NCBI RefSeq assembly: GCF_963921235.1
Contig: NC_086105.1
Span: forward strand, 102,734,001 to 102,798,000
Origin: Mobula hypostoma
Taxonomy: Eukaryota
Length of the DNA: 64,000 nucleotides
Direction: 5' to 3'
Within the stretch, counting starts at the first letter, position 1. Every line of letters begins with the position of its first letter. Made by a program: the position numbers and the translations under genes. Positions 16,555 through 64,000 of the stretch are shown piece by piece. Under the pieces are notes generated by a model that was not told where the DNA came from, did not search any database, and was given only the letters and a program-made list of their open reading frames with translations.

Positions 16555-17070
16555 CCTTAGGTCACATTTGGAGTATTGTAAGCGGTTTTGGTCATTGCAC
16601 AGGGAGGTATAGAGGCTTTGAAGAGTGTGCAGAAGAGGTTCACCACGCTGTTGGCAGGATGTGGGCAAAAGGAGAGGTTGGAAGAACATTTGTAGGCAGA
16701 GGGTGACTTGAGAGGTAGATAAAATTGAGATTCACAGACAGAGTATATAGTGAGAGTGCAAAATCCAGGACAATCATGTTAAATATTAGAGGGCGAAGCT
16801 TTAACATGAGAAAGATTGTTTAAAGCAGATTTACAAGGCAGGGTGTTTTATGCAGAATGGTAGATGTCTAGTGTGTGCTGCCAGGGGTGATTATTGAAGA
16901 AGATGCAATAACAAATTTAAAAAGCATTTAGAGAGGTATTTGAACAAATAGGGAATGAGGAAAGATAAGCATGTACAGGGAGGTGCGATTAGTTTAAATC
17001 AGCATCATGGTGAGCATCGACATTGTGGGCCAAAGGTCCTGTTCTAGTGCTGTACTTTTCTGTATTCTAC
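16555..17070 (+). mobile_element. Old CR1 3' fragment
   Basis: cacatttggagtattgt...cagaagaggttcacc (HLEYC/QRRFT-like), followed by a CR1-type 3' UTR. Confidence 0.65.
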
Positions 17071-17549
17071 CTGCTATAATACATTATTTATGAAAAGTCT
17101 GGGTGTTACCCTGGTCATCAAATCTAATGAATCGAAACTATATGTGGTACTGTTGTACAAAAATTGGCTAATATGGATGGTGTTAGGAGAATCAGAGAGG
17201 TGTTACTGGATGTGTGGGAGGATGGGTACAGAAAATCTAGTATTTCTGTAATTGTTCTGATAGTTGACAATGTGTCAATAGGCTGAATGGCCTGATACTT
17301 TGTTATGAAATGTGAGAAATATGTGAGAAATTGGCTTTTGCTTTTCCCCAAAGTACAGCAGTTAATTTATTTCTAAATTACTTCAGCAGATGAAAAATGC
17401 TTTGACCTGTCCCGGGACAGTGAAAGGTCCTACAGTATTCTTTTTTAACACCAAACCATTGTTCATCTCAACATAGTGTAAATCATAGATTATTAAATTT
17501 TCATTCTCTAGAAATGAAGAATTTACCTCTGTGAGAGAAATATTGTTTC

Positions 17550-17555
17550 TTTATT
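17550..17555 (-). terminator. Polyadenylation signal of beta-1
   Basis: AATAAA 200 nt after the stop, conserved in beta-2 (55877-55882). Confidence 0.8.
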
Positions 17556-17754
17556 GAATAAAGGAGAATGCTTACAGACATTTTCCAAACATTGAGGAAA
17601 GTTACCATACAAAGGGGAATATTGTGCCAATTTACATTAGCATGACTTGAACCTGATGTTACACAAGTCCTTTAAGCAAACAACACATTGTAGATGCTGA
17701 TAATACAGGTTTTCATCGCATTTTTGAAGGTGATGGAGGATGCGGCTTATAGAT

Positions 17755-19105
17755 TTAATGGTAGTTGCTGGAGAGAGCTTCTATCACCAATTTAAAAAAC
17801 TTGTACACAGCTTCATGTTCCTCTGGTCCAAATGCTTTTTTATCATGAAGAGCGAGTTCAACAATGAAGGCGTGGCCGAGAAGCTGTGCAGAAAAACAAT
17901 CATTATCCAACATTGAAACAAAAACTGGAAAGCAAAATTCAAAGCTCAGCTGACTTCATACAGAACAGCCCAGAAGGAGACCATTTTATCAACTGGTTCT
18001 ATGTCAATTCTCAGTGATGCAAAAACAATTAGGCCCCACTTTTTAACTGTGCCCCGACATCGTATTCTGGTCTCATGCCCAACAAAGCCCTTTTCATTCT
18101 GTCTGCCAAACAGCAGCTAATTAATTTAAAACACAACAAACTAGAGCAAACTCTCTGCAGACAACACCGGATGTGAGGATTATACCTGTGAGGAGCAGTG
18201 AAGTAGAAAACAATTCTGCATCTGTCAGATGTTGAATAAAAGGAACTTGAAATCAGCTGTGTTCCTGTGCAATCCTGTCTAATCTAGTACATGAATTGTC
18301 GAGTGAGCATCCTGTGTAAATAGCTCTCATTAAAGTGATTAAATTTTCTAACCTGTGAACCTTATCCGGATCTAATTCTCAGGGAAAACTAGAGAAGCAC
18401 TGCCTTTTCCTCAGCAACCAGGTGTTCTTTTCCCTGGAATTAAATCCACGATGCTTGGTTGCCATGTTTGTTACGACTCTGTAATTAGGAAATATTTATC
18501 GCAACCCTTTAGCAAAAATGTACACATCCTAAAAAGATCGGTTTCTACCTTAAAGTTTTGAGTGTCCACTCCGATTTTTTGATGTTTACTGCTGAGTTCA
18601 TAGAAATTAGTTTCGATACTCTTCAAGTCCTCAATTGCAGTGTTCAGAGCCTTTAACACTTTGTCTGCATGAGCCTGAACACCAGGGTCACCGACTGCAA
18701 AACGACCATTGAAATTTTTAAATAGTCTGGTCGTCCAGGGATAGACTGCAAATACCCTAGAAAGGAAAAAAAAACAAATTGCCCAGTTTCTTTTCTGATA
18801 AGTTAGAATTAACTTATTTCTCAAAGCTCATTACTGAGGAAATTTTTATCAAGAGTTGCGTATCACTGGGTTAGACTGGAACCTCAGTGCGGTTCCTTTA
18901 CCCTACGACAACATCTAGGCAAGCTTAGAAAATTTAAAAACCTTCACTGGAACCATAGTTGAGAATATAGTGCATGATTTAAACACAAAACAGAAAATAC
19001 ATTTTCATCATACCTTGCCAAGGCTTGGGCAGTTATCATCTTCTTATCCAAAAGGTCCCATTTGTTCGTGATGTATTGTTCCTGAGCCTTTGTTAAATTC
19101 ACCAT
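17755..19105 (-). CDS. hbb: Haemoglobin beta chain, copy 1; complement(join(17755..17883,18549..18756,19014..19105)); 142 aa
   Basis: Spliced protein: [146 protein letters not shown] introns of 257 nt (phase 2) and 665 nt (phase 0) sit at globin positions. It has VYPWT, CD1 Phe43, distal His60, proximal His89 and C-terminal YH. Confidence 0.97.
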
Positions 19106-19177
19106 TTTTTGGTTGTTAAGCTCTCACTGTCACTACCTGCACAAGAAAGCTGTGTTGACATGGAGTTTTGATCTCAC

Positions 19178-19301
19178 TTTTATAGGCTGCAATAGGGCTC
19201 ATCTCAGACTAACACTTAACTGTAATAGGCTGACCACTAGTAGGTTAGATACACTTTCCAAGAGAGGGCAGCAACCCTTCTGTATTTGTGTGTTAAGATA
19301 A
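19178..19301 (-). promoter_or_regulatory. Beta-1 promoter: TATAAAA (19178-19184) and GATA site AGATAA (19296-19301)
   Basis: The TATA box is 73-79 nt upstream of the ATG and is conserved in beta-2. Confidence 0.8.
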
Positions 19302-20089
19302 ACACTTGCTGAACAATTGCTTGTCTGAGCCTCACGTCTGCCCACACAATGCAAAGAATCATTCTCTAGTTTTATTGAATAATAATTCAATACATTCATT
19401 TCCAAACTGTAGTGCTCTTTCATTGTTAATTGAATTTCACTTCTACACGTCATTCTGCTGGCTAAAATTTTTCATTAATTAATATTGTTATTTTTTAGAA
19501 GTTAATATGATTCTAATGTTGGAATCAAATCCATGTCTGTTCTGACATAACTTGAATAATCTTCTCATCTATATAGATATGGGATTGTACCAAGGGAAAA
19601 CTGATGACAAACTTACATCATTACATTAAGGCATGATTATTTTGAAATGCTGGGCTACACAGTAATGTGTACTTCATGGTCCCTGAGCTCTGACTGATGA
19701 TTCTGCTATCAACATTCACTGAGTAACTAACAGTACTTTACATCATCAGTGGGTAGATTTATGAGTTTGGTAAATGGACACACATGGACAAAGCTCTATT
19801 TCTGTTTTGTGTGTCCATCCAATGTTGAACCAGCCGTGAGCATTGACAAACTTACTGTAGGTGGAATGTAAACATGAAAAGACCAATGCGGGAAAATGTG
19901 GGTTCTCAACAAACAAAGATGTGAGACTTTATAATGAGAAATAATAAAATGTCAGTGGAATTAAGCAAATGTCTCCTGTCTGTTTGTGTATTGGATTTTC
20001 AATAAGATTTTGATATGTTTATGTTCAGGTGAAGATAAACAAGGACAGCTCACATAGAATTTGGGGGTCACTGTGTCCTTGAGAGTTGT

Positions 20090-20805
20090 TTAACAAATGG
20101 AAAACAGAGTAGAGAAACAGACCCCTCATAGATAGCCAGGCTGCAGCTAATGGGGTCCAACAGGGATCGGTGCTGGATTCCAAGCATTTACAATGTCTAT
20201 TAGCAGTTTGTCTGAGAAAACCTGATGTAACTTTTCCATATTTGCTGATGATAGAGACCTAATTGGGAATTTCTGTTCAGGCTGCATCTGGAGTATTGTA
20301 TTCAGTTCTGGTCACTCATCATTGGAAGGATGTGTAGGCCATGGAGAGGGTTCGGAAGAGGTTTACCAGTGTGCTGGCTGGATTGGAGAGAATGTGCTAT
20401 AAGGAGAGTGAACAGATGAGAATTGTTTTCAGTGGAGTAGGAAAGGGATGACCTGACAGAAATTTATAAAAATATGAGAGGTGTTAATAGAGTAGACAGA
20501 CTTTTTGCCCAAAGTTGAAATGTCCACTACTGGAGGACATGCATTTATGGTAAGAAAGGAAAATGTAAAGGAAATGTATGGGATAAGTTTTTTTAACAGA
20601 GTAGTGAGTGTTGGCGCTGTCTTACCATGAGTGGTAGTGGAGGTAGATACGATAGAGGTGTTGAAGACGCTTTAAGAAAGACACATAAATGTGCAGAGAA
20701 CAAGGGATACGAACAACATGCGGACAGAATGGATGAGATATCACTAGCTTAATTAGTTTGGCTGAAGGGCCTTTTCTTGTCCTGTACTGTTCTAGGTTCT
20801 AAAGC
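20090..20805 (+). mobile_element. Old CR1 RT/3' fragment shared with the duplicate block (~58310-59010)
   Basis: ggggtccaacagggatcggtgctgg (GVxQGSVL), tttgctgatgat (FADD), catctggagtattgt (HLEYC). Confidence 0.7.
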
Positions 20806-21699
20806 CTTGGTAAAATGACAGCTATGTTATTGTTCACAATTTTGGACACTTTGTTTTCTTAAAAAGACATGTTCACTCTTAAGGTGTTTTGCAAAGTTTC
20901 ACAGGACCAGTTAGAATATCAGATGTGGATTAAAAAATGCACAACAATAATGAACCAACATGCTAATTTACCAGTTTAATTTAGAGAAAGTCAGAAATAC
21001 TCAAGAAGTCTGTAAATTTTCCTTTTTCTCAGCCACTTGCACAGCCTGACCTGTGAGTAATTCCAGCATTCTGTTTCTGAAGTTTCCAGCATTTGCAAGT
21101 GTTTTCGATTATCAGATGTGTGGGTGCTCACCACTGATAGTACAATGTTAAGTACATTTTCTACTCAGTAAATGAAGTAGCCCATTCTGCCATAAGTAGC
21201 TGGTAACATTCACGTCACCAAGTGCCAGGTAACAAGGACCTCCTTGCATGCAGAATTTTATCCTTGTGTTCATTACTAGTACAAAATTGCCTAACATTAC
21301 CATCCTGTGTATCATGACTGACCAAGTACTGAACTGGATCAGCTACAAAAGTACTGTGATAAATGAGTTGGTCAGACCCTGGCTTTGCAACGGCAAGTGA
21401 CTCAGTTATACCACAGTAAAACCTTTCCACCTTCCAAAGGTACAATTCTGCAATGTGATGGAATGCTCCCAATGTTCTTTTTGTATTTTGTTAGTTTTTT
21501 TGTGTGGGGGTGGGGGGGATGTTGGGTGGTTGAAGATTGTGTTGCTTTTTTTTTGTGTGCAGGGGGTAGGTTTGCTGTTTCTCTTTGGATTTACTTCCAC
21601 GGTTTTCTTTGTTTCATGGCTATCTGTAGAAGAAGACCCACAGAGTTGTATACCACATACATACTCTGATAACATATGAACCTTTGAAACTTTGAACAG

Positions 21700-23820
21700 T
21701 GCATTGAGGTAATACATGGTAAAGCAATAACAGAATGCAGAATAAAGTGTTACTTTCACCAAGAAAATGCAATGCAAGCTGACAGTAAGATGCAAGGCCA
21801 CAGTGAGGTAGGTTGTGAGGTCAAAGGATCATCTTATTATGGTACTGCTGAGTGCCCTTATAACTGTGGGGTATCGTCTGCCCTATGGAGGGTGGAGAAG
21901 AGAGCATGTCAGGGGTGAGTGCAGTCCTTGATTATGTTGGCTTCTTTACCAAGGCAGCAAAAGGTGTAGGTAGACTCCATGGAGAGGATGCTACTTTTTT
22001 TTCTGTGCTAAATTTTGGTCACAACTCTGTATTTTCTGCTGATTATTGGGAGAGCAGTTGCCACACCAACCTGTGATACATCTGGATAGGATGCATTCTA
22101 TGTTCTATCAATAAAAACTAGTGACGGTCCGATGGGCCATGCCAGATTTCTTTAGCCTCCAGAAGAAGCTGGGATTTCTTGGCCATGGTGGAACTAGGAG
22201 CCTGTTGGTGATATTCACTCCTGGGAACTTGAAGCTCTTAACCTACTTGATCTCAACACTGTTGATGTAATCAGGTGTGTGTGCACCACCCACCCTCGTG
22301 AAGTCAATGACCAGCTCTTTTGTTTCACTGACATTGAGGGAAAGATTGTTGTCATGACAGAATGATACTAGACTCTTACTTTATTCAGTTTATTGTAATT
22401 TGAGATTCGGCTCACTGTGCTGGTATCATTTGTAAACTTGTAGATGGAGTTAGAGCAGAGCCTGGCTACACAGTTGTGAGTGTACAGAGAGTAGAGTAGG
22501 CTACCGCTGATGAAGCCTTGTGGGCCGCCAGTGTAGAGAATAATGAAGATGGAGGTAATGCCACCTACCCTTACTGAGTGTGCTCTGTTGGTTAGGAAGT
22601 CAGGTTGTGAGCTGAAGACAGGGTAGCCCTGTGACATTGATGGTCCTCTGTTCATGTGTTCATTCTGAAGCTGAAACAGCATGCTACAACTCTAGAGAGT
22701 CACCAGCATGATTTAGAGTGGGAAGGTCAGGGAAGCTTCTATGGTTCCTGGTGATTATACCTGTGGGAAGTGTGTTCAGTTGCAGCTGCTGACTGACCGT
22801 ATAGAGTGACTGGGGCTGTAGATGAATCAAAAGGATGAGATACTGCAGACAGAATTGAGAGAGATGGGTAGAAGGTTAAAATGTAGGAGCAGTAGGGTTA
22901 TAATCCCTGGGTAACTCCATGTGTTGTTTCCTAGTGAGCGTGGGAATAGGAGGATAGGGTTGATGAATGTGTGGTTGATGAACTGGTGCAGGTCTGAGGT
23001 ATATCTTGGAGTGTTGGGATATCATTCAGGACAGGGATCACCCGTACAAGAAGGACACATCGCAATAGGCTTCCTGCTGGAGGCAATTGCTAAAGTTACT
23101 TGGATGGGTTTGAACAAGTTGAGCAGGATATGGATCCAAAAATGGTTATGCAATCAGTGAGGAAACTGAGGTAACTATAGAGGCTAAATTGAACAAATCC
23201 AGCCAGCAGGAGCAGGACAAGAAGCGAGGAAGGTTTGATCACCTAAACTGCAAGAAGCAGAACAGGCTGATGTATCTTCGGATATCTTTGGCATGTGGGA
23301 TTGTGATAGTATATCTACTACAGAAATATGAGACAGTGAGTGGATATCATTTGTTTGGATTTTCAGGAAGCCTTTAACAAGGTCTGGCACACAAAGGGGC
23401 TACTCTGGATAAGTGATAAAGTACAAGTATAGATAGAAAGATGGTTGATTGCCAGAAGTCGGAAAGTTGAGATAAAGGGTACTTTTCGGGATGGCTGCTG
23501 GTGACTTTTGGAATTCCAAAGGGGTCAGTGTTGGATTTGCAGCTTTTCACTTCATACAATAATGATTTGGATGGAACTGATGATATTGTGGCTACATTTG
23601 ATAAGCGAAGGAACAGGCTATAGCCCTGAGGCAAGTAGTCTGTAGAATGACCTGGACAGGTTGGGAGAGTGGGCAAAGTTGAGGGAGATGGGATACAGAA
23701 TAGTGAATGTGAGGTTATACACATTAGAAGAAGAACAACAGACTATTTTTCTAAATGGGGAAAATTTTCAGAAATCAGAGGTGTAAAGTGACTTAGGGTT
23801 CCTAACTTAGAATTCCTTCA
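21700..23820. mobile_element. Mosaic of old Rex1/L2-like (minus, ~21700-22610) and CR1 (plus, ~22720-23820) fragments shared with the duplicate block
   Basis: DFLTNRAHSVRVG...GGPQG...LYSLYTHNC in ORF 22368..22682 is paralogous to ORF 60609..60917. Confidence 0.7.
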
Positions 23821-25340
23821 TAGAAACATAGAAACATAGAAAATAGGTGCAGGAGTAGGCCATTCGGCCCTTCAAGCCTGCACCACCATTCAGTATGATC
23901 ATGGCTGATCATCCAACTCAGAACCCTGTACCAGCCTCCCCTCCATACCCCCGATCCCTTTAGCCACAAGGGCCATATCTAACTCCCTCTTAAATATAGC
24001 CAATGAACTGGCCTCAACTGTTTCCTGTGGCAGAGAATTCCACAGATTCACCACTCTCTGTGTGAAGAAGTTTTTCCTAATCTCGGTCCTAAAAGGCTTC
24101 CCCTTTATCCTCAAGCTATGACTCCTCGTTCTGGACTTCCCCAACATCGGGAACAATCTTCCTGCATCTAGCCTGTCCAATCCCTTTAGGATTTTATACG
24201 TTTCAATCAGATCCCCCCTCAATCTTCTAAATTCCAACGAGTATAAGCCTAGTTCATCCAGTCTTTCTTCATATGAAAGTTCTGCCATCCCAGGAATCAA
24301 TCTGGTGAACCTTCTTTGTACTCCCTCTATGGCAAGGATGTCTTTCCTCAGATTAGGGACCCAAAACTGCCAACAATACTCCAGGTGTGGTCTCACCAAG
24401 GCCTTGTACAACTGCAGTAGCACCTCCCTGCTCCTGTACTCGAATCCTCTTGCTATAAATGCCAGCATACCATTCGCCTTTTTCACCGCCTGTTGTACCT
24501 GCATGCCCACTTTCAATGACTGGTGTATAATGACACCCAGGTCTCGTTGCACCTCCCTTTTTCCTAATCGGCCACCATTCAGATAATAATCTGTTTACCT
24601 GTTTTTGCCACCAAAGTGGATAACTTCACATTTATCCACATTAAATTGCATCTGCCATGAATTTGCCCACTCACGTAACCTATCCAAGTCACCCTGCATC
24701 CTCTTAGCATCCTCCTCACAGCTAACACTGCCGCCAGCTTCGTGTCATCCGCAAACTTGGAGATGCTGCATTTAATTCCCTCATCCAAGTCATCAATATA
24801 TATTGTAAACAACTGGGGTCCCAGCGCTGAGCCTTGCGGTACCCCACTAGTCACTGCCTGCCATTCTGAAAAGGTCCCGTTTATTCCCACTGTTTGCTTC
24901 CTGTCTGCCAACCAATTCTCTATCCACATCAATACCTTATCCCCAATACTGTGTGCTTTAAGTTTGCCACTAATCTCCTGTGTGGGACCTTGTCAAAAGC
25001 CTTTTGAAAATCCAAATATACCACATCCACTGGTTCTCCCCTATCCACTCTACTAGTTACATCCTCAAAAAATTCTATGAGATTCGTCAGACATGATTTT
25101 CCTTTCACAAATCCATGCTGACTTTGTCCGATGATTTCACCACTTTCCAAATGTGCTGTTATCACATCTTTGATAACTGACTCTAGCAGTTTCCCCATCA
25201 CCGATGTTAGGCTAACCGGTCTATAATTCCCTGGTTTCTCTCTCCCTCCTTTTTAAAAAAGTGAGGTTACATTAGCCACCCTCCAATCCTCAGGAACTAG
25301 TCCAGAATCTAAAGAGTTTTGAAAAATTATCACTAATGCA
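23821..25340 (-). mobile_element. Young 5'-truncated CR1 LINE (RT domain and 3' end)
   Basis: [31 protein letters not shown] and LYKALVRPHLEYC lie in three frameshifted ORFs, with a (CATAGAAA)n tail. The empty site is seen at ~62503 in the duplicate block. Confidence 0.95.
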
Positions 25341-26828
25341 AGGACAATTTGCAGGTGAGTCAATAGTAAAGAAGTGAATTAGCATTCATTTTGGAAGGAT
25401 TAGAATATAAAAACAAATACATAATGCTGTGGTTTAAGTCATAGGTCAGACTGCATTTGGAATATTGTGAGCAATTTTGGATCCTGTTGCTAAAGAAGAG
25501 AGCTTGGTAGGGTCCGGACACTCAGAAGAGTGATCACAGGAATGAAAGGCTTAATACATGAGGACACAATTTCTATGTATATTAAGAGAAAAATGGGTAA
25601 AAGATTAGAGTATTTTCCCTTTAGTAATATATATATATATATACAGCTACAAGTAAAGAGTACAGTCTTAAATGTGTATTTCTCATCTGTCTTTACTGTG
25701 GCAAAGGATATGAAACCTGGTGAGTTCAGGGAGAATTTCAATGATATCCTGAAGCATATTGACATACTAAAGACGAGGCATTTGCAGTCAAAGCTCATAA
25801 TACATAGTGTATATATCTCCAAGATACTGATATCAAGTTGCTCTAATCACAGAAGGAAAATTTGCTTCTTAGAGTGGACTTTCAGGAAATATATTGCAAG
25901 AAATTTTGGCGTTGCATAAACCAATTGAATGTTCCAACTTCAGTAATTCCTTTATCCACAATGATATTGAAAGAGATAATAATGATGATTTTGTCTCCTG
26001 GATGTTGAATTTTTAGGATTATGTGATCGCATATTTAAAGCTGCATTGGTAATTCTGTTTTAGAAAACAAAATGCTTTTTCAGGATTAAGTTTTATGGAG
26101 AGCCAGAATTACTTTTCACATTTTCTCTGGAGTGTAGACAGCTGAGGGGTGACCTGACAGAGGTGTATAAATCAAGAGGGGAATCAATGGGTGGTCATAG
26201 TGTTTATCCGAGTGTAGGACAGTCTATACTCAGGCACCAGAAGAGAAACTTTTTCACACAGAGTGGAGGGTATATGAAATGAGCTAGGAGAGCAAGCTGT
26301 AGAGACATGTATTATTACACTGTGGAAGAGACATTTAAACAGTTCCACTGTTCGAGATGGTTTACATGGATATGAGCCAAATGTGAGCAAACGTGAGTGA
26401 CTAGGTCAGATAGACATTAGTTGGTATGAATGAGTTTGGCTAAGTGGACTGTTCCCTTGTGGTATAAATCTATATTTTAACTGTAAAGCTTGCTTTGGGT
26501 AGTGAGTCATGATATGTTGTTGAAGTATAAAAGCCATACGGAAATATTTCGATCTCCTCTTTCAAATATTTTGCTGTTCAGAATCTGAACTTGATTCATT
26601 TACAATGGATTGAAAAGTAACTTCCATGCAAACAGACGTTTGTTGGCTCAATGCTTTTATGTCCAAGTTCTTTCTCCACTTTGTTGTTATCTAGTGATAG
26701 AGGTAAACAGACCCTGCAGTATTGTTTGTGTTCTTGTAAGTGGACATATCTGACAGATATATTTCTGAAATTGTGTATACATAATAAATCAGCCACAGCA
26801 AATGATAAAGCATTAACAAAAATGAATG

Positions 26829-26834
26829 TTTATT
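26829..26834 (-). terminator. Polyadenylation signal of alpha globin
   Basis: AATAAA 100 nt downstream of the TAG. Confidence 0.7.
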
Positions 26835-26933
26835 TAGTTTAGTTTACCAATTATGCCAAAATTTAATCAATGACAAAATGTGGAATTAAATGTTGATCTC
26901 GCTGTTGTTCACCGTAGTTTGTCGATTGCGTCT

Positions 26934-27888
26934 CTAACGGTACTTGGAGCTCAATTCATGTGCGAGCAACTCAAGGAATTTGTCGACAGCACAGTGGGTT
27001 GCAGGGGTGAACGCAGGCAAGTAAATGGCCAGGGTAACTGTGATACAATCAGCCAACAGCTGTAAAAGAGAAAAATTATAAAAATGAGGCAGTGTTAGTA
27101 TTCGCAACTCATGATTTTACCCATCAAATGAATGTTGGTTGTTTGTACTTTGACTGCTTTGCTGTGTATCGTGTAGAGGGAAAAAGTATTCCCTGCAAAG
27201 CTGAACAAGACTACACTTCTAGATAGCTGAAGCTGCAACTAAATAAAGTTGAAAGTTCAGAGTTGCTGATCTAATCACAATATCATAGTTTGTGTAATGA
27301 CAATGAGGAAGAATCTGTAAAATTGTTACATACCTGAAAGTTATGAGGATCCACGAGAAGTTCTTCACCATGTCTCTTGGCAAGCTTTTCCAGATGTTTA
27401 CTCAGGTTGTCCACGTTGTGGGCTGCATCCGCCACAGCTTCCATGACAATGCGACCATGTCTTCTGACAGGCTGGTCAGAGGCTTTGTAGCCATTGAATT
27501 TCGGGAAGTACGTCTTAGCTTGAGGGTGGATCTCAAACAACCTTCAGAAACATGGAAAATGAAGGCAGAAATTATGTTCCAACACAATATACACTACATC
27601 TCACTTAGGATTAAATTCCATTATTCTCCAGACAAGTAATCACATTATTTTGGAAAAACTTCAATCCTATGCAGAGAATATCTTCGTACACTTATTAATG
27701 GTCTCAATGTGCAAGGGAAATGCAAAGAAATATTAACAATTACAAATAATAGCTGAAAATGCAATAACTATACTGTGAATCTAAGAAAATTACCTAGCTA
27801 AAGCATCGGCACCCAAAGTTTCAGCATTTGCCTTTATGTGGTGGCCTAGTTCTTCTATAACCTGTTTGTTGGGGCCAGAGAGTACCAT
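26934..27888 (-). CDS. hba: Haemoglobin alpha chain; complement(join(26934..27059,27334..27541,27794..27888)); 142 aa
   Basis: Spliced protein: MVLSGPNKQVIEELGHHIKANAETLGADALAR/LFEIHPQAKTYFPKFNGYKASDQPVRRHGRIVMEAVADAAHNVDNLSKHLEKLAKRHGEELLVDPHNFQ/LLADCITVTLAIYLPAFTPATHCAVDKFLELLAHELSSKYR. Alpha hallmarks are MVLS, PQxKTYF, VDPxNF, DKFL and SKYR. GT-AG introns are 252 and 274 nt. Distal His60, proximal His89. Confidence 0.97.
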
Positions 27889-27955
27889 TGTTGCTGAGTT
27901 TTCACTTTTTCAGATCTCACAATAACCAGGAGATGCCTCTGGCTTGATGAGTCCA

Positions 27956-28157
27956 TATTTATTGTAATTCACACTGAGCCACACCCTCTCCACCCCACTT
28001 TTCCCATTGGTTGACAATAGTGAATAGAGAACCAATCGTCTGTTTCACATATAACTGTTGGCAAAGATATCCTGTCCAGAAGAGCTAAACACTACCTGCA
28101 CATATTTCACTTGATGCACACATGTAAAGGTTTAGTTTATTGCCATATAAGTTATCA
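27956..28157 (-). promoter_or_regulatory. Alpha-globin promoter: AATAAATA TATA-like box (27956-27963), CCACACCCT (27979-27987), CACCC (27991-27995), CCAAT (28006-28010; inverted copy 28032-28036), TGATAA (28152-28157)
   Basis: Motifs read directly. Their spacing from the ATG is typical of globin promoters. Confidence 0.75.
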
Positions 28158-28218
28158 GTAAATGCACATTAATAGTCATTAATCAATATGTGTTTCCAAA
28201 CTAACCCTGTTATAATAA

Positions 28219-28341
28219 TCCCTTACTCACTCTTCCTTCAGTTAGTCCTGACGAAGGGTCTCGGCCTGAAACGTCGACTGCACCTCTTCCTGGAGATGCT
28301 GCCTGGCCTGCTGCGTTCACCAGCAACTTTTATGTGTGTTG
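28219..28341 (+). mobile_element. 123-bp Penelope-derived short insertion with 13-bp TSD
   Basis: TSD cctgttataataa at 28206-28218 and 28342-28354. The body matches the 3' repeat of the Penelope-type copies at ~30950 and ~47980. Confidence 0.85.
28243..28280 (+). ncRNA. Minimal type I hammerhead ribozyme motif
   Basis: TAGTC-CTGACGA-AGG(GTCTCGG)CCT-GAAAC-GTC^GACTG. Core CUGANGA at 28248-28254 and GAAA at 28268-28271, with predicted GUC cleavage after 28275. Stem I is UAGUC/GACUG and stem III is the palindromic ACGU. Confidence 0.8.
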
Positions 28342-29718: not shown

Positions 29719-29719
29719 G

Positions 29720-30300: not shown

Positions 30301-30302
30301 AT

Positions 30303-34399: not shown

Positions 34400-34850
34400 G
34401 ATATGATAGCTGATTTAGACGCCTGATGTTATTAATGCTTACAGTTATTTGGGCTACAGCTTGTTAAAACATTTGGAAAAGCTGTTTTGGATCATCAGAA
34501 GTTCAGAGATGGGGGGTGTAGATTATCTAAAGACATCAGCTTCTTGGTGTGCCTAGATATCTGCAGGTTTGAAAAGTGTGGGACAAAGGATAATTACACT
34601 TATTTTTCTGAGAACAACCTTTCCAAGATAAAGAACTTAGCTTAAGATCACAAACAACTTTCTCTCCATATAGGGCTACCTTCCAATATTTGGTACAATG
34701 ATTCAGCGAGTTGCAGCTGAACATTTGTTGATGAGTCATTGGAACTTTATCAGCTTTGAAGTGATGAATATACACAATAGACCATTTCCAGAACATCCAA
34801 GTGCACGAGTCTTGCAGATGTATGATTGGGTACAACTCAGTTATCAACCG
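34400..34850. promoter_or_regulatory. Candidate erythroid enhancer, copy A
   Basis: WGATAR at 34404, 34523, 34626, 34747 and 34841. TGATGAGTCAT at 34729-34739, E-boxes at 34714 and 34815, GGGTG at 34514. Confidence 0.5.
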
Positions 34851-50655: not shown

Positions 50656-50659
50656 AATT

Positions 50660-54579: not shown

Positions 54580-55876
54580 CATTAAATGCTAAGCCTCTGT
54601 GCCATTACATTTTTATAGTATATTAAAAATGGTCTTAAAACCAAAGCGCATCTTTGAGCATATGAACCACTGGCTTAATCACATGGAACTCTGAAATCAG
54701 GAGCTTGTGAGCTGTGACAATGTGCAGTGATATCCATTAATGTAGATGTTGGTGGTTTCTGTGACAGAGTGCATCTTTACTTTGCTACAGCTGGTGATCT
54801 AGAAATAAACACTTAATTTGTTTTCACTTCATTCCGATGGGGCCACAGTGAATGGCGGTGTTCATAAGATAGGGTTCATCTCTCTGTAGATTAGAATATC
54901 AGATTGTGAAGGGTGACCAGTGGAGGAAAGAACCACAAATGCATCTCCTCCATTCCTAGAACTTAGAGCTGAATATAATGGATGGATGTGTTAAATGGAA
55001 GCTAGAGCTGAACTCCCACATTTTGAACATAAGTGTACCAGCTTTGCTCCACCTCCACATCACACCCTGTTGCAGCAACAGATGAGCATTTCTAATTTTT
55101 GATGAAATATTTTTGATAATTCAGATAGGCCTCTGTTTACTTTCAACATAAGTGACGTTTCCAGCAATGAAACTTGACAGTGTTTTACAATGATCTGCAC
55201 ATATCTGGTCTGAGTGTGAAAGACCACAACCAAAGCTATTGTGGACACTTTCCTTATTTTAAAGTAGACAGTTGTTGGATTTTCATTCTCTGCACCTGTT
55301 GTTTTAAACTAAAAATTGTATTAATTTATTCTATTCTGTATGCTATAATACATTTTCTAAACAAAAGTGTGGGTATTATCCCGGTCATCAAATCTCTCTT
55401 AAAAATGGCCCACTGATGAATAATTAAATCATTGCTCTGTATAGAGAATCTTTTTATAATTCATCCCAACTATGTGGTACTTTGGTACAAAAATGGTCTA
55501 AGATGTGATGGTGATGGGAGAATGGGGAGGTGTTAATGGATTGTGTGGGAGGATGACTACAGAAAATCTAAGATCTTTGGAAATACTCTGAGGACTGACA
55601 GTGTGTCATTGGGCTGATAACTTGTTATGAAACGTGAGATAAAAGTGAGAATTTGGCTGTTACTTTTCCCCAAAGTACATCAGTTAGTTTACTTCTAAAT
55701 TAGTTCAGCAGATGAGAAATGCTTTGACCTGTCCTGGGACAGTGAAAGGTCGAACAGCACAATGTCTGCTTTTTAACAAAAAACCATTGTTCATCTCAAC
55801 ATTGACCAAGTCAAAGATCTTTTAATTTTATTCTCTAGAGATGAAGAATTTACTTCTGTGAGAGAAATGTTGTTTC

Positions 55877-55882
55877 TTTATT
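55877..55882 (-). terminator. Polyadenylation signal of beta-2
   Basis: AATAAA ~205 nt after the stop, homologous to 17550-17555. Confidence 0.8.
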
Positions 55883-56087
55883 GTAGCAAAGAGAATGCTT
55901 ACAGATATTTTTCAACTTTTGAAGAAAATGACCATACAAAGAGGAGTATTGTGCCACCTTTACATTAGCATGACTTGAACCTGATGTTACACAATTTCTT
56001 TAAGCAAACAATGCATTGTAGATGCTGATAATACAGGTTTTCATTGCATTTCTGAAGGTGGTTAAAACCCTAATGCAGGTTATAGAT

Positions 56088-57348
56088 TTAATGGTAGTTG
56101 CTGGAGAGAGCTTCTGTCACCAGTTTAAAAAACTTGTAGACAGCTTCATGTTCCTCTGGTCTGAATGCCTTTTTATCATGAAGGGCGAGTTCAACAATGA
56201 AGGCCTGGCTGAGAAGCTGTGAAGAAAAACAATAATCATACAACATTGAAACAAACCTGGAAAGCAAAACTCAAACCTCCAAAGACTTGATACAGAATTG
56301 CCCAGAAGGAGTCCATTTTGAACTCTGGGTCGATGTCAGTTCCCAGTCTTGCAAATACGTTGGGCCCCACCTTTTTCCTTGTACCCCGACATCATATCCC
56401 TATTTCATGTGCCCATCAAAGCCTTTTTGACTCTTTTTGACAAACAGTAGCTAATTAACTAGAAGCACAGCAAACTGGAGCAAACTCTCTACAGACAACA
56501 CCCAATGTCAGGATAATTTCAAAGTCCCTGGAGCAGTGAAGTCAAAAACAATCCTTCATCTGTTAGATGTTGAATAAAGGGAAATTGAAATCAACTTCTC
56601 AGGAAAATTTCAAAAGGACTGCCTCTTGCACAGTGAGCAGATGTGCTCTTTTTGCCTGCAGTTTAGTCCATGATGCTTGGTTGTCATGTTTGTTACGACT
56701 CTGTAATTGAGAAAAATCTATAGCACCCCATTTATGAAAATTTGCACATCCTAGAAAGATTGGTGTTTACCTTGAAATTTTGAGTGTCTACTCCGATTGT
56801 TTGATGTTTACTGCTGAGATCATGGAAATTGGTTTCAATACTCTTCAAATCCTCAATTGCAGTGTTCAGAGCCTTTAGCACTTTGTCTGCATGAGCCTGA
56901 ACACCAGGGTCACCGACTGCAAAACGGCCATTGAAATTCTTAAACAGTCTGGTCGTCCAGGGATAAACCGCGAATACCCTAGAAAGAGAAAAACAAATTG
57001 CCTAGTTTCTGTTGTGATAACTTGGAATTAATTAATTGCTCAAAGTTCATGATTTAGGACCTTTTTATCAAATAAAGAGTTGATTTTCTTGTGGGTTTAA
57101 CTAGAACCTCAGTGCAGTGTTGAATACTAATTCCCTCACCCAATGACAACATCTAGGCAAGCATAGAAAATTAAAGAGCCTTCACCAGAACCATAGTTGA
57201 AAATACAGTGCATGATTTAAACATAAAACAGAAAATACATTTTCAACATACAGTACCTTGCCAAGGCTTGGGCAGTTATTGTTTTCTTATCCAAATGGTC
57301 CCATTTGTTCGTGATGTATTGTTCCTGAGCCTTAGTTAATTTCACCAT
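56088..57348 (-). CDS. hbb: Haemoglobin beta chain, copy 2; complement(join(56088..56216,56771..56978,57257..57348)); 142 aa
   Basis: Spliced protein: [146 protein letters not shown] introns are 278 and 554 nt. It is 132/142 identical to beta-1. Confidence 0.97.
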
Positions 57349-57418
57349 TTTGGCTGTTAAGCTCTCACTGTCACTGCTCACGCAAGAAAGCTGTGTTGAT
57401 CTGGAGTTTTGACTTCAC

Positions 57419-57425
57419 TTTTATA
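57419..57425 (-). promoter_or_regulatory. Beta-2 TATA box (TATAAAA)
   Basis: 71-77 nt upstream of the ATG and homologous to 19178-19184. Confidence 0.8.
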
Positions 57426-60400
57426 GGCTCCGAAATGGCTCATCTCAGGCTAAAACATTTCTGTAATAGGCTGATTACATGATGGGTTGGGCACACTTTC
57501 CAAATGTGGGCTGCAACCCTTCTGTGTTTGTGTGTTAACACTTGCTGAACAATTGCTTGTCTGAGCCTCACTTCTGCCCATCCAACACGAAGAATAATTC
57601 TCCAATTTTGTCGAATATTAATTCAATACATTCATTTTCAAACTGTAGAACTCTCTCCTTGTTAGTTGAAATTCAGCTTTTACACTTTTTCATTAAATAA
57701 TACTATTTTTCAAAAATTAATACATTTCTGATGTTGAAATTAAATCCATGACTATTATAATATAGCTTCATTAATGTTCTCATCTGTAAAGATATGGGAT
57801 TATAGCAATGGAAAACTTATGACAAACTTACATCAGTAAATTGAGACAAGATTATTTTGAAATACTGAGCTACAGCAATAATGAGCACTTCATGGTCCCT
57901 GGGGTCTTTCTGACTGATGACTCTGCTATCAACGTTCACTGGGTAACTAATAGCAATTTGCATCGTCTGTGGGTAGTATTATGCATTTGGTAAATGGACA
58001 CATATGGACAAAGCTCTATTTCTGTTTTGTGTGTCCATTGAATAGAGAACCAGCCATGAGCATTCACGAGTTACTGTAGGTGAAGTGTAAACATGAAAAG
58101 ACCAATGAGGGAAAATGTGGGTTCACTACGAACAAAGATCGGAGACTTTATAATAGGAAATAATAAAATGACAGAGGAACTAAACCAATGTCTCCTGTCT
58201 GCTTAAGTATTGGATTTTCAATAGGCTTTCAATAAGGTTGTGTTCAGAAGATAAACAGGGACAGCTCACATAGAATTTGGGGGTCACTGTGTCCATTGAG
58301 AGTTGTTTAACAAATGGAAAACAGAGTAGAGAAACAGACCCCTCATGGATAGTCATGCTGCAGCTAATGGGGTCCATCAGGGATCAGTGCTTGGACCCCA
58401 AACATTTACAATGTCTGTTAACAGTTTATCTGAGAAGACCTACTGTAACATTTCCAGATTTGCTGATGATAGAGAACTAATTGGGAATTTTCTGTTTAGA
58501 CAGAACTAGAGTATGATATTCAATTCTGGTCACTCATCATTGGAAGGATGTGGAGGCCATGGGGAGGGTTCAGAAGATGTTTATCAGTGTGCTGGCTGGA
58601 TTGGAGGGAATGTGGTATAAGGACAGTGGACAGATGAGAGTTGTTTTCACTGGAGTGGAAGAGGGGTAACCTGACAGAACTTTATAAAGTTATGAGAGGT
58701 TTCGATAGACTAGACAGCCAGTGTTTTATTGCCCAGGGTTCAAATGTCTACTACTGGAAGGCTGCATTTATCGTAAGACGGGGAAGTTCAATAGGTTTTT
58801 TTTAACGGAGTGGTGAGTGTTGTTGCTGTGTTACCATCAGTGGTAGAAGAGGTAGATATGATAGAAGTGTTGAAGAGGCTCCCTGAAAGACACATAAAGT
58901 GTACAGGGAACGAGGGATATGGATCACATGCAGGCAGAATGGATTAGATGTTGCTAGCTTAATTAGTTTGATTGAAGGGCCTTTTCCTGTCCTGTATTGT
59001 TCTAGGTTCCAAAACCTTGGTGAAATATCAGAAATGTTATTGTACAAAATTTTGGTCTTTGCTTTCTGAAAAAGACATACTAGATCTTAAGGTGAGTGCA
59101 AAGTTTCAAAGGACGGGTCAGAATATCAGATGTGGATGAAAAGCGCAGGTATTGATATAGCCACAAGTACAGCCTGAGCTGTTGAGTAATTCCAGCATTC
59201 TGTTTATGAGGTTTCCAGCATTTGCAAGTGGTTTTGATTGTCAGATGTGAGGGTGCTTACCAGTGATAGCACAATGTTCAAATACATTTTCTACTCAGTA
59301 AATGAAGTAGCCCATGCCTTGATACAACAATCCTCATAAAACATTATACTGTAAGTAGCCGGTATTATTCACATCAGGAAAGTACCAGGTAACAACAATC
59401 TCCAACAAGATGTCATGCAGACATTGGTCCTTGTGTTCAAGAGCATTCTTATCATTGAGTCCCACCATCAACATCCTGGGCATCTCCACTGACCAGGTTC
59501 CAAATTTGATCAGATACAGAACTACTCTGGATGCGTGAACGGGGCAGACACTGGCTATGCAATAGCAAGAGACTCACTAATACCATGGTAAAAAACTTTC
59601 CGACTTTCACCAAAGGTACAATTCTGCGTATGATAGAATACACCCCACTTGTCTGAATGAGGATGGCCCCATCAGCACAGAAGAAGCTGCTCACCACCAT
59701 CCACACTTACACACCAGCTTGCCTGAATGTTCCTCCATCAGCCATCCATGCACCCTGTCCTCTCCAGCCACTGCAGCAGTCGTTGCACAAAGCTGCCCAC
59801 AACTCCAGCTTCAGCTGCTCTGCTTCTGTATTGTCCCTTTAAGAGACAAAACACAATGGATCTATTGCTAAATTGATAAATCAGTTTGCTATTGTCACAT
59901 GTACTAAGATAGTCTGAAGCAATAACAGAATGCAGAATAAAGTGTTACTTTTACCAAGAAGGTGCAGCGCAAGTCGACAATAAGTTTCAAGGCCACAATG
60001 AGGTAGATTGTGTGGTCGAGAGATCATCCTACTACAGTAATATTCAATACCCTTAGAACTGTGGGGTAGAAGCTGTCCTTGAGCCTACTTGTATGTGCTT
60101 ACAAGCATTTGTATTGTCTACTCTATGGGAGGGTGGAGAAGAGAGCATGTCTGGGGTGAGTGGGGTGCTTAATTATGTTGGTTTCTTTAGCAAGGTGGTA
60201 AAAAATGTTGGTAGACTCCATGGAGAGGATGCTGGTTTTTGTTCTGTGCTAAATTCTGGTCACAACTCTGTATTTTCTGCTGATTATTGGGAGAACAGTT
60301 GCCACACCAACCTGTGATGCATCTGGATAGGATGCATTCTATGTTCTATCAATAAAAACTAGTGACGGTCGGATGGGACATGCCCGATTTCTGTAGCCTC

Positions 60401-61170
60401 CAGAAGAAACTGAGATTTCTTGGCCATGATGGAACTAGGAAACTGTGGGTGATATTCACTCCTGGGAACTTGAAGCTCTCAACCTACTTGATCTCAACAC
60501 CGTTGATGTAATCAGGTGTGTGTGCACCACTCACCCTCGTGAAGTCAATCACCAGCTCTTTTGTTTCACTGACATTGAGGGAAAGATTGTTGTCATGACA
60601 GAATGTTATTAGTCTCGTACTTTACTCAGCTTATTGTTACTTGAGATTCGGCTCACTGTGGTGGTATCATTTGTAATGATGGATTTCGAGCAGAACCTGG
60701 CTACGCAATTGTGAGCGTACAGAGAGTACAGTGGGGTATCGCTGATGAAGCCTTGTGGGCCGCCAGTGTTGACAATAATGAAGATGGAGGTAATGCTACC
60801 TACCCTTACTGAGTGTGCTCTGTTGGTTAGGAAGTCAGGTTGTGTGCTGAAGACAGAGTAGTACTGTGAGATTGATGAACCTCTGTTCATGTGCTCATTC
60901 TGAAGCTGAAACAGCATGCTACAACTCTAGAGAGTCACCAGCACGATTTACAGTGGGACACATTACATACTGAGTCTATGTCTACTTGATTTAAATAACA
61001 CTAGAGAGACATAGATTACTAGTATTGCACATGAAAATGCAGGAAAGAAATTTCTCAGAGTTGTTTCATTGTAAGTCAGAGGCTTTGCTTGGAGACACTT
61101 CAGTGAGGAAGTTGAACAAGGGTCAGGTAAGATGGAAGTGAGATCTTTTCCATCCGTCCATAGTCTTAGT

Positions 61171-61346
61171 AGCCGGCTGGTGGCATAGTGGCATCAGCAT
61201 TGGACTTCGGAGCGATTCCATCCGTGCTGAGTTGAGCGTCGTTAGCAACTCATAAAAAGGAAATTGCCTGCTACAGAAACATCAACAACAAAAAGTTGCT
61301 GGCCTATGCTCTCTCTTGAGTTTAGAAGGCAATTTCCTTTTCCTTC
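61171..61346 (+). mobile_element. 176-bp SINE-like insertion with 10-bp TSD
   Basis: TSD tagtcttagt at 61161-61170 and 61347-61356. The head has a tRNA box A-like TGGCATAGTGG. Confidence 0.8.
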
Positions 61347-62724
61347 TAGTCTTAGTGATTCAGGGATGGCTGTCAGGACAGTTGTGCGTACATCCTGCAG
61401 AACATGGGAAGGTCAGGGAAGCTTCCATGGTTCCTGGTGATTATACCTGTGGGAGGTGTGTTCAGTTGCAGTTCCTGACTGACTGTATAGAGTGACTGGG
61501 GCTGTAGATGAAACAAAAGGATGAGATACTGTAGAGGGAATTGAGAGAGATGGGTAGAAGGTTAAAAAGTAGGAGCAGTAGGGTTATAATCCCTGGGTAA
61601 CTCCATGTGCTATGTTGTAATGAAATAGCAGGATAGGGCTGACGAATGTGTAGCTGATGAACTGGTGCAGGGAGACACACACCTCGAAATGGTGGGATAT
61701 CTTCCAGGACCGAGATCACTTATACAAGAGGGACACATTGCAATAGGCTTCCTGATTGAGACAATTGCTAGAATTACTTGAATGGGTTTGAACAAGTTGA
61801 GCAGGATATGGATCCCAAAGTAGTTACGCAATCAATGAAAAAGCTGGAGTAAATATAGAGGTTAAAGTGAAAAACTCCAGCCGGCAGGAGCAGGACAAGG
61901 AGCGAGGAAGGTCCAACCACCTAAACTGCAAGCAGCCTGATAGGCTGATGATTTCGGAGCACCTTTGGCATGTGGGATTGTGATATTATATCTCTTACAG
62001 AAACATGATACATTGAGTGGATATCATTTGTTTGGATTTTCAAAAAGTCTTTAACAAGGTCTGACACACAATGCTGCTACTCTGGATAAGAGATAAAGTA
62101 CAAGTATAGATAGAAATGTGGTTGATTACCTTAGAAGTCAAAGATTGGGGATAAGATGGTGCTTTTCACAATGGCTGCTCGTAACTTTTGGAATTCCACA
62201 AGGGTCAGTGTTAGATTTCCAGCATTTCATCTTATACAATAATGATCTGGATGAAGAAAATTATGATGTTATGGCTACATTTGATAAGTAGAAGAACAGG
62301 CAATATCCCAGAGGCAGGAAGCCTGCAAAATGACCTGGAGAGGTTGGGAGGTTGGGCAAAGAATAAGCAGATGGAATGTAGAATAGGAAGTGTGGGGTTA
62401 TACACATTGGTAGGAAGAACAAAAGACTATTTTGTAAATGAGGAGAAAATTCAGAAAGCAGAGGTGTAAAGTTACTTGCGATTCCGAATCCTGAATTCCC
62501 TCAAGGTTAATTTACAGGTTGAGTCAATAGAAAACAAGACAAGTGCAATATTAACATTCATTTTGGGAGGATTAGTATATAAAAACAGATACGTAATGCT
62601 GAGGCTTTATAGTCATGCAGAATGATGCAAGAACATCAGGCACATATATGTATATAGCTAGGGTGTCAAAGGACTGTATTTCTCAATAAGGAGCAGAGAG
62701 CAAGTTTGTGGATCTCGAGGGACT

Positions 62725-63548
62725 AATATCAGAATTAGAATCAGGTTTATTATCACCGGCATGGGAAGTGAAATTTGTTAACTCGGCAGCAGCAGTTCAA
62801 TGCAATACATAATCTAGCGGGGGAAAAAAGAATAATAATAAATAAAATTTTAAAAAATAAACAAGTAAACAATTACGTATATTAAATTCATTTTTAAAAA
62901 ACATGCAAGAACAGAAATACTGTGTATTTTTTTAAAAAGTGAGGTAGTGTCCAAAGATTCAATGTCCATTTAGGAATCGGATGGCAGAGGGGAAAAAGCT
63001 GTTCCTGAATTGCTGAGTGTGTGCCTTCAGGCTTCTGTACCTCCTACCTGATGGTTACAGTGAGAAAAGGGCATGCCCTGGGTACTGGAGGTCCTTAATA
63101 ATGGACACTACCTTTCTGAGACACCGCTCCCTCAAGATGTCCTGGGTACTTTGTAGGCTAGTACCCAAGATGGAGCTGACTAGATTTACAACCATCTGCA
63201 GCTTCTTTTGGTCCTGTACAGTAGCCCCTCCATACCAGACAATGATGTAGCCAGTCAGAATGCTCTCCACGGTACAACTGTAGAAGCTTTTGAGTGTATT
63301 TGTTGACATGCCAAATCTCTTCAAACTCCTAATAAAGTATAGCCACTGTCTTGCCTTCTTCATAACTACATCAATATGTTGGGACCAGGTTAGATCCTTA
63401 GAGATCTTGACACCCAGGAACTAGAAACAGCTCACTCTCTCCACTTCTGATCCCTCTATGAGGATTGGTATGTGTTCCTTTGTCTTACCCTTCCTGAAGT
63501 TCACAATCAAGTCTTTCATCTTACTGACGTTGAATGACTGGTTGTTGC
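62725..63548 (-). mobile_element. Rex1/Babar-like LINE 3' part, absent from block 1
   Basis: KKARQWLYFIRSLKRFGM...ESILTGYIIVWYG with an agaatc-type tail. It interrupts the old CR1 shared with 25340-25560. Confidence 0.85.
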
Positions 63549-64000
63549 TGCAATTTTGGGTCCTTTCTCCAAGGAAGGGTGTAGTAGATTGGAAGGGATC
63601 CAGAAACTCACAAGAAAGGTCATAGGAATAAATGGCTTGACATTTGAGAAGTGTTAGATGTCTCTGCGCTTGTACTCAATGGTGTTCAGACTAATAAGGA
63701 GCTATCTCAATGAAAACTATCAGAGACTGAAAGGCCTGGACAGAGTGGATGTGGAGAGAATGTTTCCATTAGGAGGAGATAATTGGATCCAAGGGCATGC
63801 CTTCAGAATTTAGGCTTGTCCCTTTAAAAGCGCTGAGGAGGAATTTCTTCAACCAAAGGGTAAAAAGAGGACATGGGATATCCTTGGCAGATAAAGTGGA
63901 GATGATTCTTCACCGTTTCTGTGCATATTAATGGAAAAAAAGGGAAAAGGTAGTGAGTATTTCCCCTTTAGGATCAGTGTGGCAAAGTATGTCGGGGTTA

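What the first reader, a model, noticed from the sequence alone, without database searches (positions are those of the whole stretch)
17060..64000. Co-oriented (alpha-beta) cassette repeated ~38.2 kb apart; a second alpha gene is predicted just beyond the window
Seen: in transcriptional order the genes run beta-2, alpha, beta-1, all on the minus strand, and the beta ATGs are 38,243 nt apart. Similarity between the blocks continues through shared ancient TE junctions up to the last bases (63910-63972 matches 25562-25625). That point is only ~1.3 kb short of the alpha stop codon in block 1. Inference: the duplicated unit is a 5'-alpha-beta-3' pair, so an alpha-2 gene should lie near 65.3-66.3 kb unless insertions intervene. 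Known: amniotes separate the alpha and beta clusters, and teleost pairs are often head-to-head. A head-to-tail alternating array bears on the ancestral gnathostome arrangement and would keep alpha:beta dosage balanced on duplication.
Basis: partly seen in the sequence, partly recalled or inferred. Interest (0 to 1): 0.7.

Follow-up and report, generated by a model that had tools for sequence, protein, structure and literature searches.

The report
Duplicated alpha-beta haemoglobin gene pair, devil ray
This is part of the haemoglobin gene cluster of the lesser devil ray, where an alpha-plus-beta gene pair was copied as one block; the predicted second alpha gene exists just past the window, but the layout is already annotated and published.

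Summary
Observation confirmed and prediction correct, but the finding is already known. The window comes from a Mobula hypostoma chromosome (GCA_963921235.1).

**Genes.** Three intact three-exon globin genes lie on the minus strand:
- beta-1, 19105-17755
- alpha-1, 27888-26934
- beta-2, 57348-56088

The two beta ATGs are exactly 38,243 nt apart.

**Duplication.** Blocks 17053-23820 and 55322-62503 are about 83% identical in non-coding DNA and about 93% in coding DNA. Beyond later LINE insertions, weak collinear matches run to 63971.

**The predicted alpha gene.** Gene coordinates on record for the assembly place a 142-aa alpha-like globin (XP_062913467) 8,888 nt upstream of beta-2 on the same strand. 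That corresponds to 66236-65284 in extended window coordinates. The alpha-1 to beta-1 spacing is 8,783 nt.

**Age.** The giant manta has 1:1 orthologues with the same spacing, so the duplication predates the split of the two Mobula species.

**Prior work.** Walt et al. 2026 (GBE, PMC13023373) already describe the co-linear alpha-beta pair as the basic duplicating unit of cartilaginous-fish haemoglobin clusters. They list these four genes.

**What remains.** These two units are parallel, whereas the paper says units duplicate in anti-parallel orientation. Beta-2 looks expressed in the available runs, which are probably RNA; beta-1 and alpha-1 do not. The balanced-dosage idea fails genome-wide (12 alpha to 8 beta). 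The scan holds no notes on other DNA that bear on this.

The parts
17755..19105 (-). beta-1 globin gene (XP_062913464, GeneID 134351319): exons 19105-19014, 18756-18549, 17883-17755; 142 aa
   Evidence: ORFs and splice sites. Exact protein match in NCBI. Pfam Globin, E 9e-23.
26934..27888 (-). alpha-1 globin gene (XP_062913465, GeneID 134351320): exons 27888-27794, 27541-27334, 27059-26934; 142 aa
   Evidence: Pfam Globin, E 7e-28. Best solved relative is stingray Hb alpha, 1CG5_A, E 2e-62.
56088..57348 (-). beta-2 globin gene (XP_062913466, GeneID 134351321): exons 57348-57257, 56978-56771, 56216-56088; 142 aa. It shares 132/142 aa and 398/429 nt with beta-1.
   Evidence: Aligns end to end with 1CG5_B, E 7e-58.
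17053..23820 (.). Block 1 of the segmental duplication: 3' flank, beta-1, and 4.7 kb of beta-upstream (beta-alpha intergenic) DNA
   Evidence: Self-BLAST. Identity by segment: non-coding 74-90%, coding 92-93%.
55322..62503 (.). Block 2 of the segmental duplication, the counterpart of 17053-23820. It includes a 451-bp block-2-only insertion at 60954-61404.
23821..25338 (-). LINE fragment (reverse-transcriptase ORFs) present only in block 1. This post-duplication insertion interrupts the block homology.
   Evidence: Matches other LINE copies at 7290-8818 and 51325-51785. RVT_1 hit for 24582-24932. Absent at 62503 in block 2.
25339..25624 (.). Continuation of block 1 homology beyond the LINE insertion: an old shared LINE fragment at 25339-25564, then unique DNA at 25565-25624
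62502..63971 (.). Continuation of block 2 homology at 62502-62616, 63550-63648 and 63911-63971, separated by block-2-only TE-like sequence
   Evidence: The offset of the last segment (38,346) equals the alpha-2/alpha-1 offset derived.
19179..19184 (-). TATAAA box of beta-1, 79 nt 5' of the ATG. The beta-2 equivalent is at 57425-57420. An AATAAA-type box for alpha-1 is at 27963-27958.
   Evidence: The proximal beta promoters are 91% identical over about 330 nt.
17550..17555 (-). AATAAA poly(A) signal of beta-1. The beta-2 signal is at 55882-55877. The alpha-1 signals are at 26867-26862 and 26834-26829.

Best explanation
The window covers part of the haemoglobin cluster of the lesser devil ray, Mobula hypostoma. 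A unit made of an alpha-globin gene followed about 8.8 kb downstream by a co-oriented beta-globin gene was duplicated en bloc in direct (head-to-tail) orientation.

On the minus strand this gives 5'-alpha-2 (just outside the window, about 66236-65284), beta-2, alpha-1, beta-1-3'.

Each gene keeps its own TATA-type promoter and poly(A) signal and remains under purifying selection, so the duplication added haemoglobin isoform genes. The event predates the split of M. hypostoma and M. birostris.

After it, LINE and other insertions broke up the intergenic homology. Unequal crossing-over between dispersed repeats is the inferred mechanism; it is not shown here.
For: **Shown**
- Three intact genes, their strand and their spacing.
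- Kilobase-scale homology of blocks 17053-23820 and 55322-62503 at about 83%.
- Collinear continuation to 63971.
- A 142-aa Globin gene, identified as alpha-like XP_062913467, lies 8,888 nt upstream of beta-2 on the same strand. The alpha-1 to beta-1 spacing is 8,783 nt.
- Offsets of 38,346-38,350 nt agree at three independent points.
- None of eight other cluster globins has a called gene within 10 kb on either side, so the tight spacing is specific to these two units.
- M. birostris has near-identical proteins with consecutive accession numbers. Beta-1 differs from ..584 at 2 aa, with the clade supported 100/99. Beta-2 differs from ..586 at 3 aa, alpha-1 from ..585 at 3, and alpha-2 from ..587 at 4.
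- In M. birostris a globin gene lies 8,933 nt upstream of ..586 on the same strand.
- For beta-1 against beta-2, dS is 0.28, dN is 0.032 and omega is 0.11.
- Promoters and poly(A) signals are intact.

**Published**
- The co-linear alpha-beta pair is the basic duplicating unit of cartilaginous-fish haemoglobin clusters, and these genes are listed (PMC13023373).
Against: - No DNA beyond base 64000 could be read, because the sample's file was too large. Homology across alpha-2 itself and its flanks is therefore inferred from gene coordinates and protein identity (135/142 with alpha-1), not from an alignment.
- The alpha protein tree is unresolved. At protein level alpha-2 is closer to alpha XP_062913469 (2 differences) than to alpha-1 (7 differences). 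This could reflect gene conversion or a further duplication.
- Two of the three post-LINE matches lie in old LINE sequence and could partly reflect family similarity.
Confidence: 0.9

Rival explanations
1. Only the beta gene and about 5 kb of its upstream DNA were duplicated. Alpha-2 sits upstream of beta-2 for an independent reason, such as a separate alpha duplication or an insertion of the beta block next to an existing alpha.
For: Strong BLAST homology stops at 23820/62503. Alpha-2 protein is closer to XP_062913469 than to alpha-1.
Against: Homology resumes after a block-1-only LINE insertion and stays collinear to 63971. Alpha-2 lies at the same offset (38,348-38,350) as that last match (38,346), and the alpha-to-beta spacings are 8,888 and 8,783 nt. 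No other cluster globin examined has a partner within 10 kb.
Confidence: 0.05
2. The units are much older. Their similarity is kept up by repeated gene conversion (concerted evolution) rather than reflecting a single duplication date.
For: Walt et al. discuss concerted evolution in elasmobranch globins. The alpha paralogues are very alike, at 2-10 differences, apart from the divergent XP_062913473 at 16-23.
Against: Non-coding identity is fairly even, at 74-90% over about 7 kb including introns and distant flanks. There is no near-identical tract. Beta dS of 0.28 is not lower than the non-coding distance of about 0.19. Beta-1 has kept a separate 1:1 orthologue in M. birostris.
Confidence: 0.04
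3. The second block is an assembly artefact, that is, an uncollapsed haplotype or a false duplication.
For: None specific. This is a general risk in repeat-rich long-read assemblies.
Against: The blocks differ by about 17% in non-coding DNA and carry different TE insertions. Both beta proteins have distinct orthologues in an independent assembly of M. birostris with the same spacing. Beta-2-specific words occur in independent runs while beta-1 words mostly do not.
Confidence: 0.01

Closest known systems
Co-linear alpha-beta globin unit of cartilaginous-fish haemoglobin clusters (Walt et al. 2026, Genome Biol Evol 18:evag058, PMC13023373; elephant fish, whale shark, lesser devil ray and others)
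   Same: Same species, same genes (GeneIDs 134351319-134351322) and same basic unit. The alpha gene lies upstream of a co-oriented beta gene, and the cluster expands by duplicating that unit. Some duplications are shared between giant manta and lesser devil ray.
   Different: The paper says units duplicate in an anti-parallel orientation. The two units seen here are parallel, as direct repeats about 38.3 kb apart. Their supplementary figure could not be viewed to see whether it already shows this.
Stingray (Hemitrygon/Dasyatis akajei) haemoglobin, PDB 1CG5/1CG8
   Same: Alpha-1 (E 2e-62) and beta-2 (E 7e-58) align end to end with its chains A and B. Distal and proximal histidines and the short beta chain are conserved.
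   Different: These are paralogues or orthologues from another myliobatiform genus. Beta-1 is 65% identical to the 1CG8 B chain.
Linked alpha-beta globin loci of other non-amniote vertebrates, such as Xenopus, with the head-to-head pairs of teleosts as the contrast (own knowledge, not tested here)
   Same: Alpha and beta genes lie on one chromosome in one cluster.
   Different: Teleost pairs are often divergently oriented. Amniotes have the two families on separate chromosomes. Here the units are head-to-tail and, according to Walt et al., lack the adjacent Nprl3 gene.

Membership tests
Vertebrate haemoglobin alpha/beta globins (Pfam PF00042) | Significant match to the Globin domain over its full length | tested here: met
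   Beta-1 E 9e-23, beta-2 E 1.5e-22, alpha-1 E 7e-28, alpha-2 E 6e-28. All are well above the 22-bit cut-off.
Vertebrate haemoglobin alpha/beta globins (Pfam PF00042) | Three-exon, two-intron gene with canonical GT-AG introns and an intact reading frame | tested here: met
   All three in-window genes have a 429-nt CDS and GT...AG at both introns.
Vertebrate haemoglobin alpha/beta globins (Pfam PF00042) | Distal (E7) and proximal (F8) histidines | tested here: met
   Both are conserved in the alignments to 1CG5 chains A and B.
Vertebrate haemoglobin alpha/beta globins (Pfam PF00042) | Assignment to the alpha versus the beta subfamily | tested here: met
   Best solved relatives are the alpha and beta chains of stingray haemoglobin. 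NCBI names match. Walt et al. classify them as HbA and HbB.
Co-linear alpha-beta unit of cartilaginous-fish Hb clusters (Walt et al. 2026) | Alpha gene upstream of a beta gene on the same strand | tested here: met
   Alpha-1 to beta-1 is 8,783 nt and alpha-2 to beta-2 is 8,888 nt, same strand in both.
Co-linear alpha-beta unit of cartilaginous-fish Hb clusters (Walt et al. 2026) | Cluster expansion by duplication of the whole unit | tested here: met
   Block homology plus equal offsets at beta, at the intergenic DNA and at alpha. The alpha-2 DNA itself was not read.
Co-linear alpha-beta unit of cartilaginous-fish Hb clusters (Walt et al. 2026) | Duplicated units lie anti-parallel to each other | tested here: not met
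   The two units in and next to this window are parallel, with all four genes on the minus strand. The orientation of the remaining units could not be read.
Co-linear alpha-beta unit of cartilaginous-fish Hb clusters (Walt et al. 2026) | Cluster flanked by Aanat2/Rhbdf1 and Luc7l, with GbY at one end and Nprl3 elsewhere | not testable with these tools
   No flanking gene lies in the window, and record coordinates and DNA outside the window were not provided. This is stated only in the paper.

The most novel reading that the evidence does not exclude
The two parallel alpha-beta cassettes may be separately regulated expression units. Beta-2, and perhaps alpha-2, would supply haemoglobin in the sampled (probably adult) tissues. 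The alpha-1/beta-1 cassette would be silent there and might be embryonic. On this reading, en bloc duplication created stage-specific, co-regulated alpha-beta pairs in a lineage whose cluster lacks the Nprl3-linked enhancer. The parallel orientation would also be an exception to the published anti-parallel expansion rule.
Probability: 0.3. Interest if true: 0.4.

Novelty: already known. Interest (0 to 1): 0.15.

Why it matters
It matters little beyond confirmation. The genes are annotated in RefSeq. A 2026 paper already describes the co-linear alpha-beta pair as the duplicating unit of cartilaginous-fish haemoglobin clusters, including this species.

Two leads remain. Adjacent units here are direct rather than inverted repeats. 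The two cassettes may also differ in expression, which bears on how haemoglobin switching is organised in a lineage where Nprl3 and its enhancers are not next to the cluster.

Tried and rejected
- **DNA beyond 64000.** The look-up of encoding contigs returned gene positions but no DNA for either Mobula assembly, because the file was too large. No dot plot of the extended locus could be made, and no alpha-1/alpha-2 nucleotide comparison.
- **Positions of other cluster genes.** Record coordinates were not given. The order and strand of the other 13 cluster globins could only be guessed from GeneID order (A B | B A B A B A B A | A B A A B A B). That guess is not used as evidence.
- **Co-duplication trees.** The beta tree resolves the beta-1 orthology (100/99). 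The alpha tree is unresolved.
- **More globins in the window.** tblastn at E up to 10 found none.
- **Rfam.** The whole window gave no match at gathering score.
- **Expression.** The runs holding beta-2 words are only guessed to be RNA. Laying them on alpha-1 gave exon-only coverage, which supports RNA. The pieces were 60-nt contigs with 2-3 mismatches, probably from paralogues, and exon 1 and the 5' part of exon 2 were uncovered. Because contigs drop variants, absence of alpha-1 and beta-1 expression is a hint, not a result.
- **Gene conversion.** Considered as the cause of the coding similarity and rejected, because dS is not lower than the non-coding distance.
- **Assembly artefact.** Rejected on the 17% divergence and the orthologues in M. 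birostris.
Full report
**Source and genes.**
The window has no N runs and about 42% G+C. Exact look-up of the three spliced proteins identifies it as a 152-Mb chromosome of Mobula hypostoma, the lesser devil ray, assembly GCA_963921235.1. All three genes lie on the minus strand. Each has three exons, GT-AG introns and a 429-nt reading frame.

| Gene | Span | Exons | Accession |
|---|---|---|---|
| beta-1 | 19105-17755 | 19105-19014, 18756-18549, 17883-17755 | XP_062913464 |
| alpha-1 | 27888-26934 | 27888-27794, 27541-27334, 27059-26934 | XP_062913465 |
| beta-2 | 57348-56088 | 57348-57257, 56978-56771, 56216-56088 | XP_062913466 |

All three match Pfam Globin far above threshold. They align end to end with the alpha and beta chains of stingray haemoglobin 1CG5, and both haem histidines are kept. 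tblastn at a very loose threshold finds no further globin exon in the window. Each gene has a TATA-type box 75-79 nt upstream of its ATG and poly(A) signals downstream.

**The observation.**
The two beta ATGs are exactly 38,243 nt apart. Self-BLAST gives five collinear direct segments linking 17141-23820 with 55471-62503 at 72-86% identity.

Identity by segment:

| Segment | Identity |
|---|---|
| 3' flank | 83% |
| Introns | 78-85% |
| 4.7 kb upstream of beta | 74-90% |
| Coding exons | 92-93% |

For beta-1 against beta-2, dS is 0.28, dN is 0.032 and omega is 0.11. Both copies have therefore been under purifying selection. The coding similarity is not due to recent gene conversion, because dS is not below the non-coding distance of about 0.19.

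**Past 23820.**
Block 1 carries a 1.5-kb LINE fragment at 23821-25338 that block 2 lacks. It has reverse-transcriptase ORFs and resembles other copies in the window. Homology resumes after it in three segments.

| Block 1 | Block 2 | Identity | E-value |
|---|---|---|---|
| 25339-25442 | 62502-62616 | 79% | 7e-19 |
| 25471-25562 | 63550-63648 | 71% | 2e-9 |
| 25565-25624 | 63911-63971 | 77% | 8e-7 |

Block-2-only sequence separates these segments. The first two lie in an old LINE fragment and also match other copies, though only at 61-67%. The last is unique in the window.

**The prediction.**
DNA outside the window could not be read, but gene positions on record for the assembly could. With beta-2 as anchor, a 142-aa Pfam-Globin gene of 953 bp lies on the same strand, and its start is 8,888 nt upstream of the beta-2 start. 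Looking up the alpha-like protein XP_062913467 returns the same pair from the other side.

In extended window coordinates this alpha-2 gene spans 66236 (ATG) to 65284 (end of stop). The offsets from alpha-1 are 38,348 nt at the ATG and 38,350 nt at the stop. These agree with the 38,346 offset of the last in-window match, so the two blocks stay in register across the unseen 1.3 kb.

The alpha-1 to beta-1 spacing is 8,783 nt. Eight other globins of the cluster have no called gene within 10 kb on either side. The tight spacing is thus a shared property of just these two units, which supports duplication of the pair as one block.

**Age.**
The giant manta, M. birostris, has near-identical counterparts with consecutive accession numbers.

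| M. hypostoma | M. birostris | aa differences |
|---|---|---|
| beta-1 | XP_072125584 | 2 |
| alpha-1 | ..585 | 3 |
| beta-2 | ..586 | 3 |
| alpha-2 | ..587 | 4 |

Within M. hypostoma, beta-1 and beta-2 differ at 10 positions and alpha-1 and alpha-2 at 7. The beta-1/..584 clade has 100/99 support. The alpha tree is unresolved. In the manta assembly a 142-aa globin gene lies 8,933 nt upstream of ..586 on the same strand. The pair of pairs therefore predates the split of the two species.

**What is already known.**
Walt et al. 2026 (PMC13023373) analysed the RefSeq genome of this species. They report that the basic unit of cartilaginous-fish haemoglobin clusters is a co-linear alpha-beta pair. 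[quoted passage not shown]

They also report duplications shared between giant manta and lesser devil ray. The cluster is said to be flanked by Aanat2/Rhbdf1 and Luc7l, with GbY at one end, while Nprl3 lies on another chromosome. Their table lists GeneIDs 134351319-134351322 as HbB, HbA, HbB, HbA, which are exactly the four genes discussed here. It gives 12 HbA and 8 HbB for the species.

The finding is therefore a correct rediscovery. The dosage-balance idea does not hold at genome level.

**Residual points.**
- **Orientation.** The two units here are direct repeats, not anti-parallel. I could not view the paper's supplementary figure or obtain the strands of the other units, so I cannot say whether this is an exception or just a simplification in their text.
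- **Expression.** Sampled 31-mers of beta-2 exon 2 are held at 1.00, 0.81, 0.75 and 0.75 in four small runs of one 2024 study. Beta-1 exon 2 reaches only 0.11-0.22 in runs of that study.
- **Alpha-1 in those runs.** Laid on 26500-28400, the four runs cover only parts of exons 2 and 3, at very high depth, and never the introns. This fits RNA. The pieces are 60-nt contigs with 2-3 mismatches, and exon 1 is bare. The signal probably comes from alpha paralogues rather than alpha-1.
- **Reading.** This hints that the alpha-1/beta-1 cassette is quiet where beta-2 is active. That fits the paper's remark that few paralogues are used after embryonic stages. Contigs cannot prove absence.

**Verdict.**
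The arrangement is real, old, conserved in a sister species, functional by sequence criteria, and already published. Interest is low.

Noticed in passing
window 28216-28345: A short high-copy element just upstream of alpha-1. In each of four probable RNA runs about 1,000-1,900 contigs were laid on 26500-28400; the listed pieces and loose ends show many on this element, running on into different flanking sequence. It contains a CUGACGA...GAAAC core. No Rfam hammerhead family matches it even at E up to 1; the only hit is a sub-threshold chance match to a bacterial sRNA model.
   Followed up: partly
window 33646-44111: The spacer between the cassettes has its own duplications. 33646-35920 is repeated in pieces across 36774-44111 at 77-85%, and an inverted pair lies at 37104-38016 and 39988-39101 at 88%. 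The motif content was not examined.
   Followed up: no
window 1-2200: A G+C-rich (68%), strongly C-skewed degenerate minisatellite with nested periods of 7, 31 and 69 nt, based on the GCCTCCA unit.
   Followed up: no
window 4315-4998, 24582-24932, 38371-39078, 49618-50460: Scattered LINE fragments with endonuclease or reverse-transcriptase ORFs. Several copies are 60-72% alike and account for most other self-matches in the window.
   Followed up: partly
outside the window (M. hypostoma cluster): Alpha-2 (XP_062913467) differs from alpha XP_062913469 at only 2 residues but from alpha-1 at 7. This suggests a further duplication or gene conversion among alpha genes to the right of the window.
   Followed up: no
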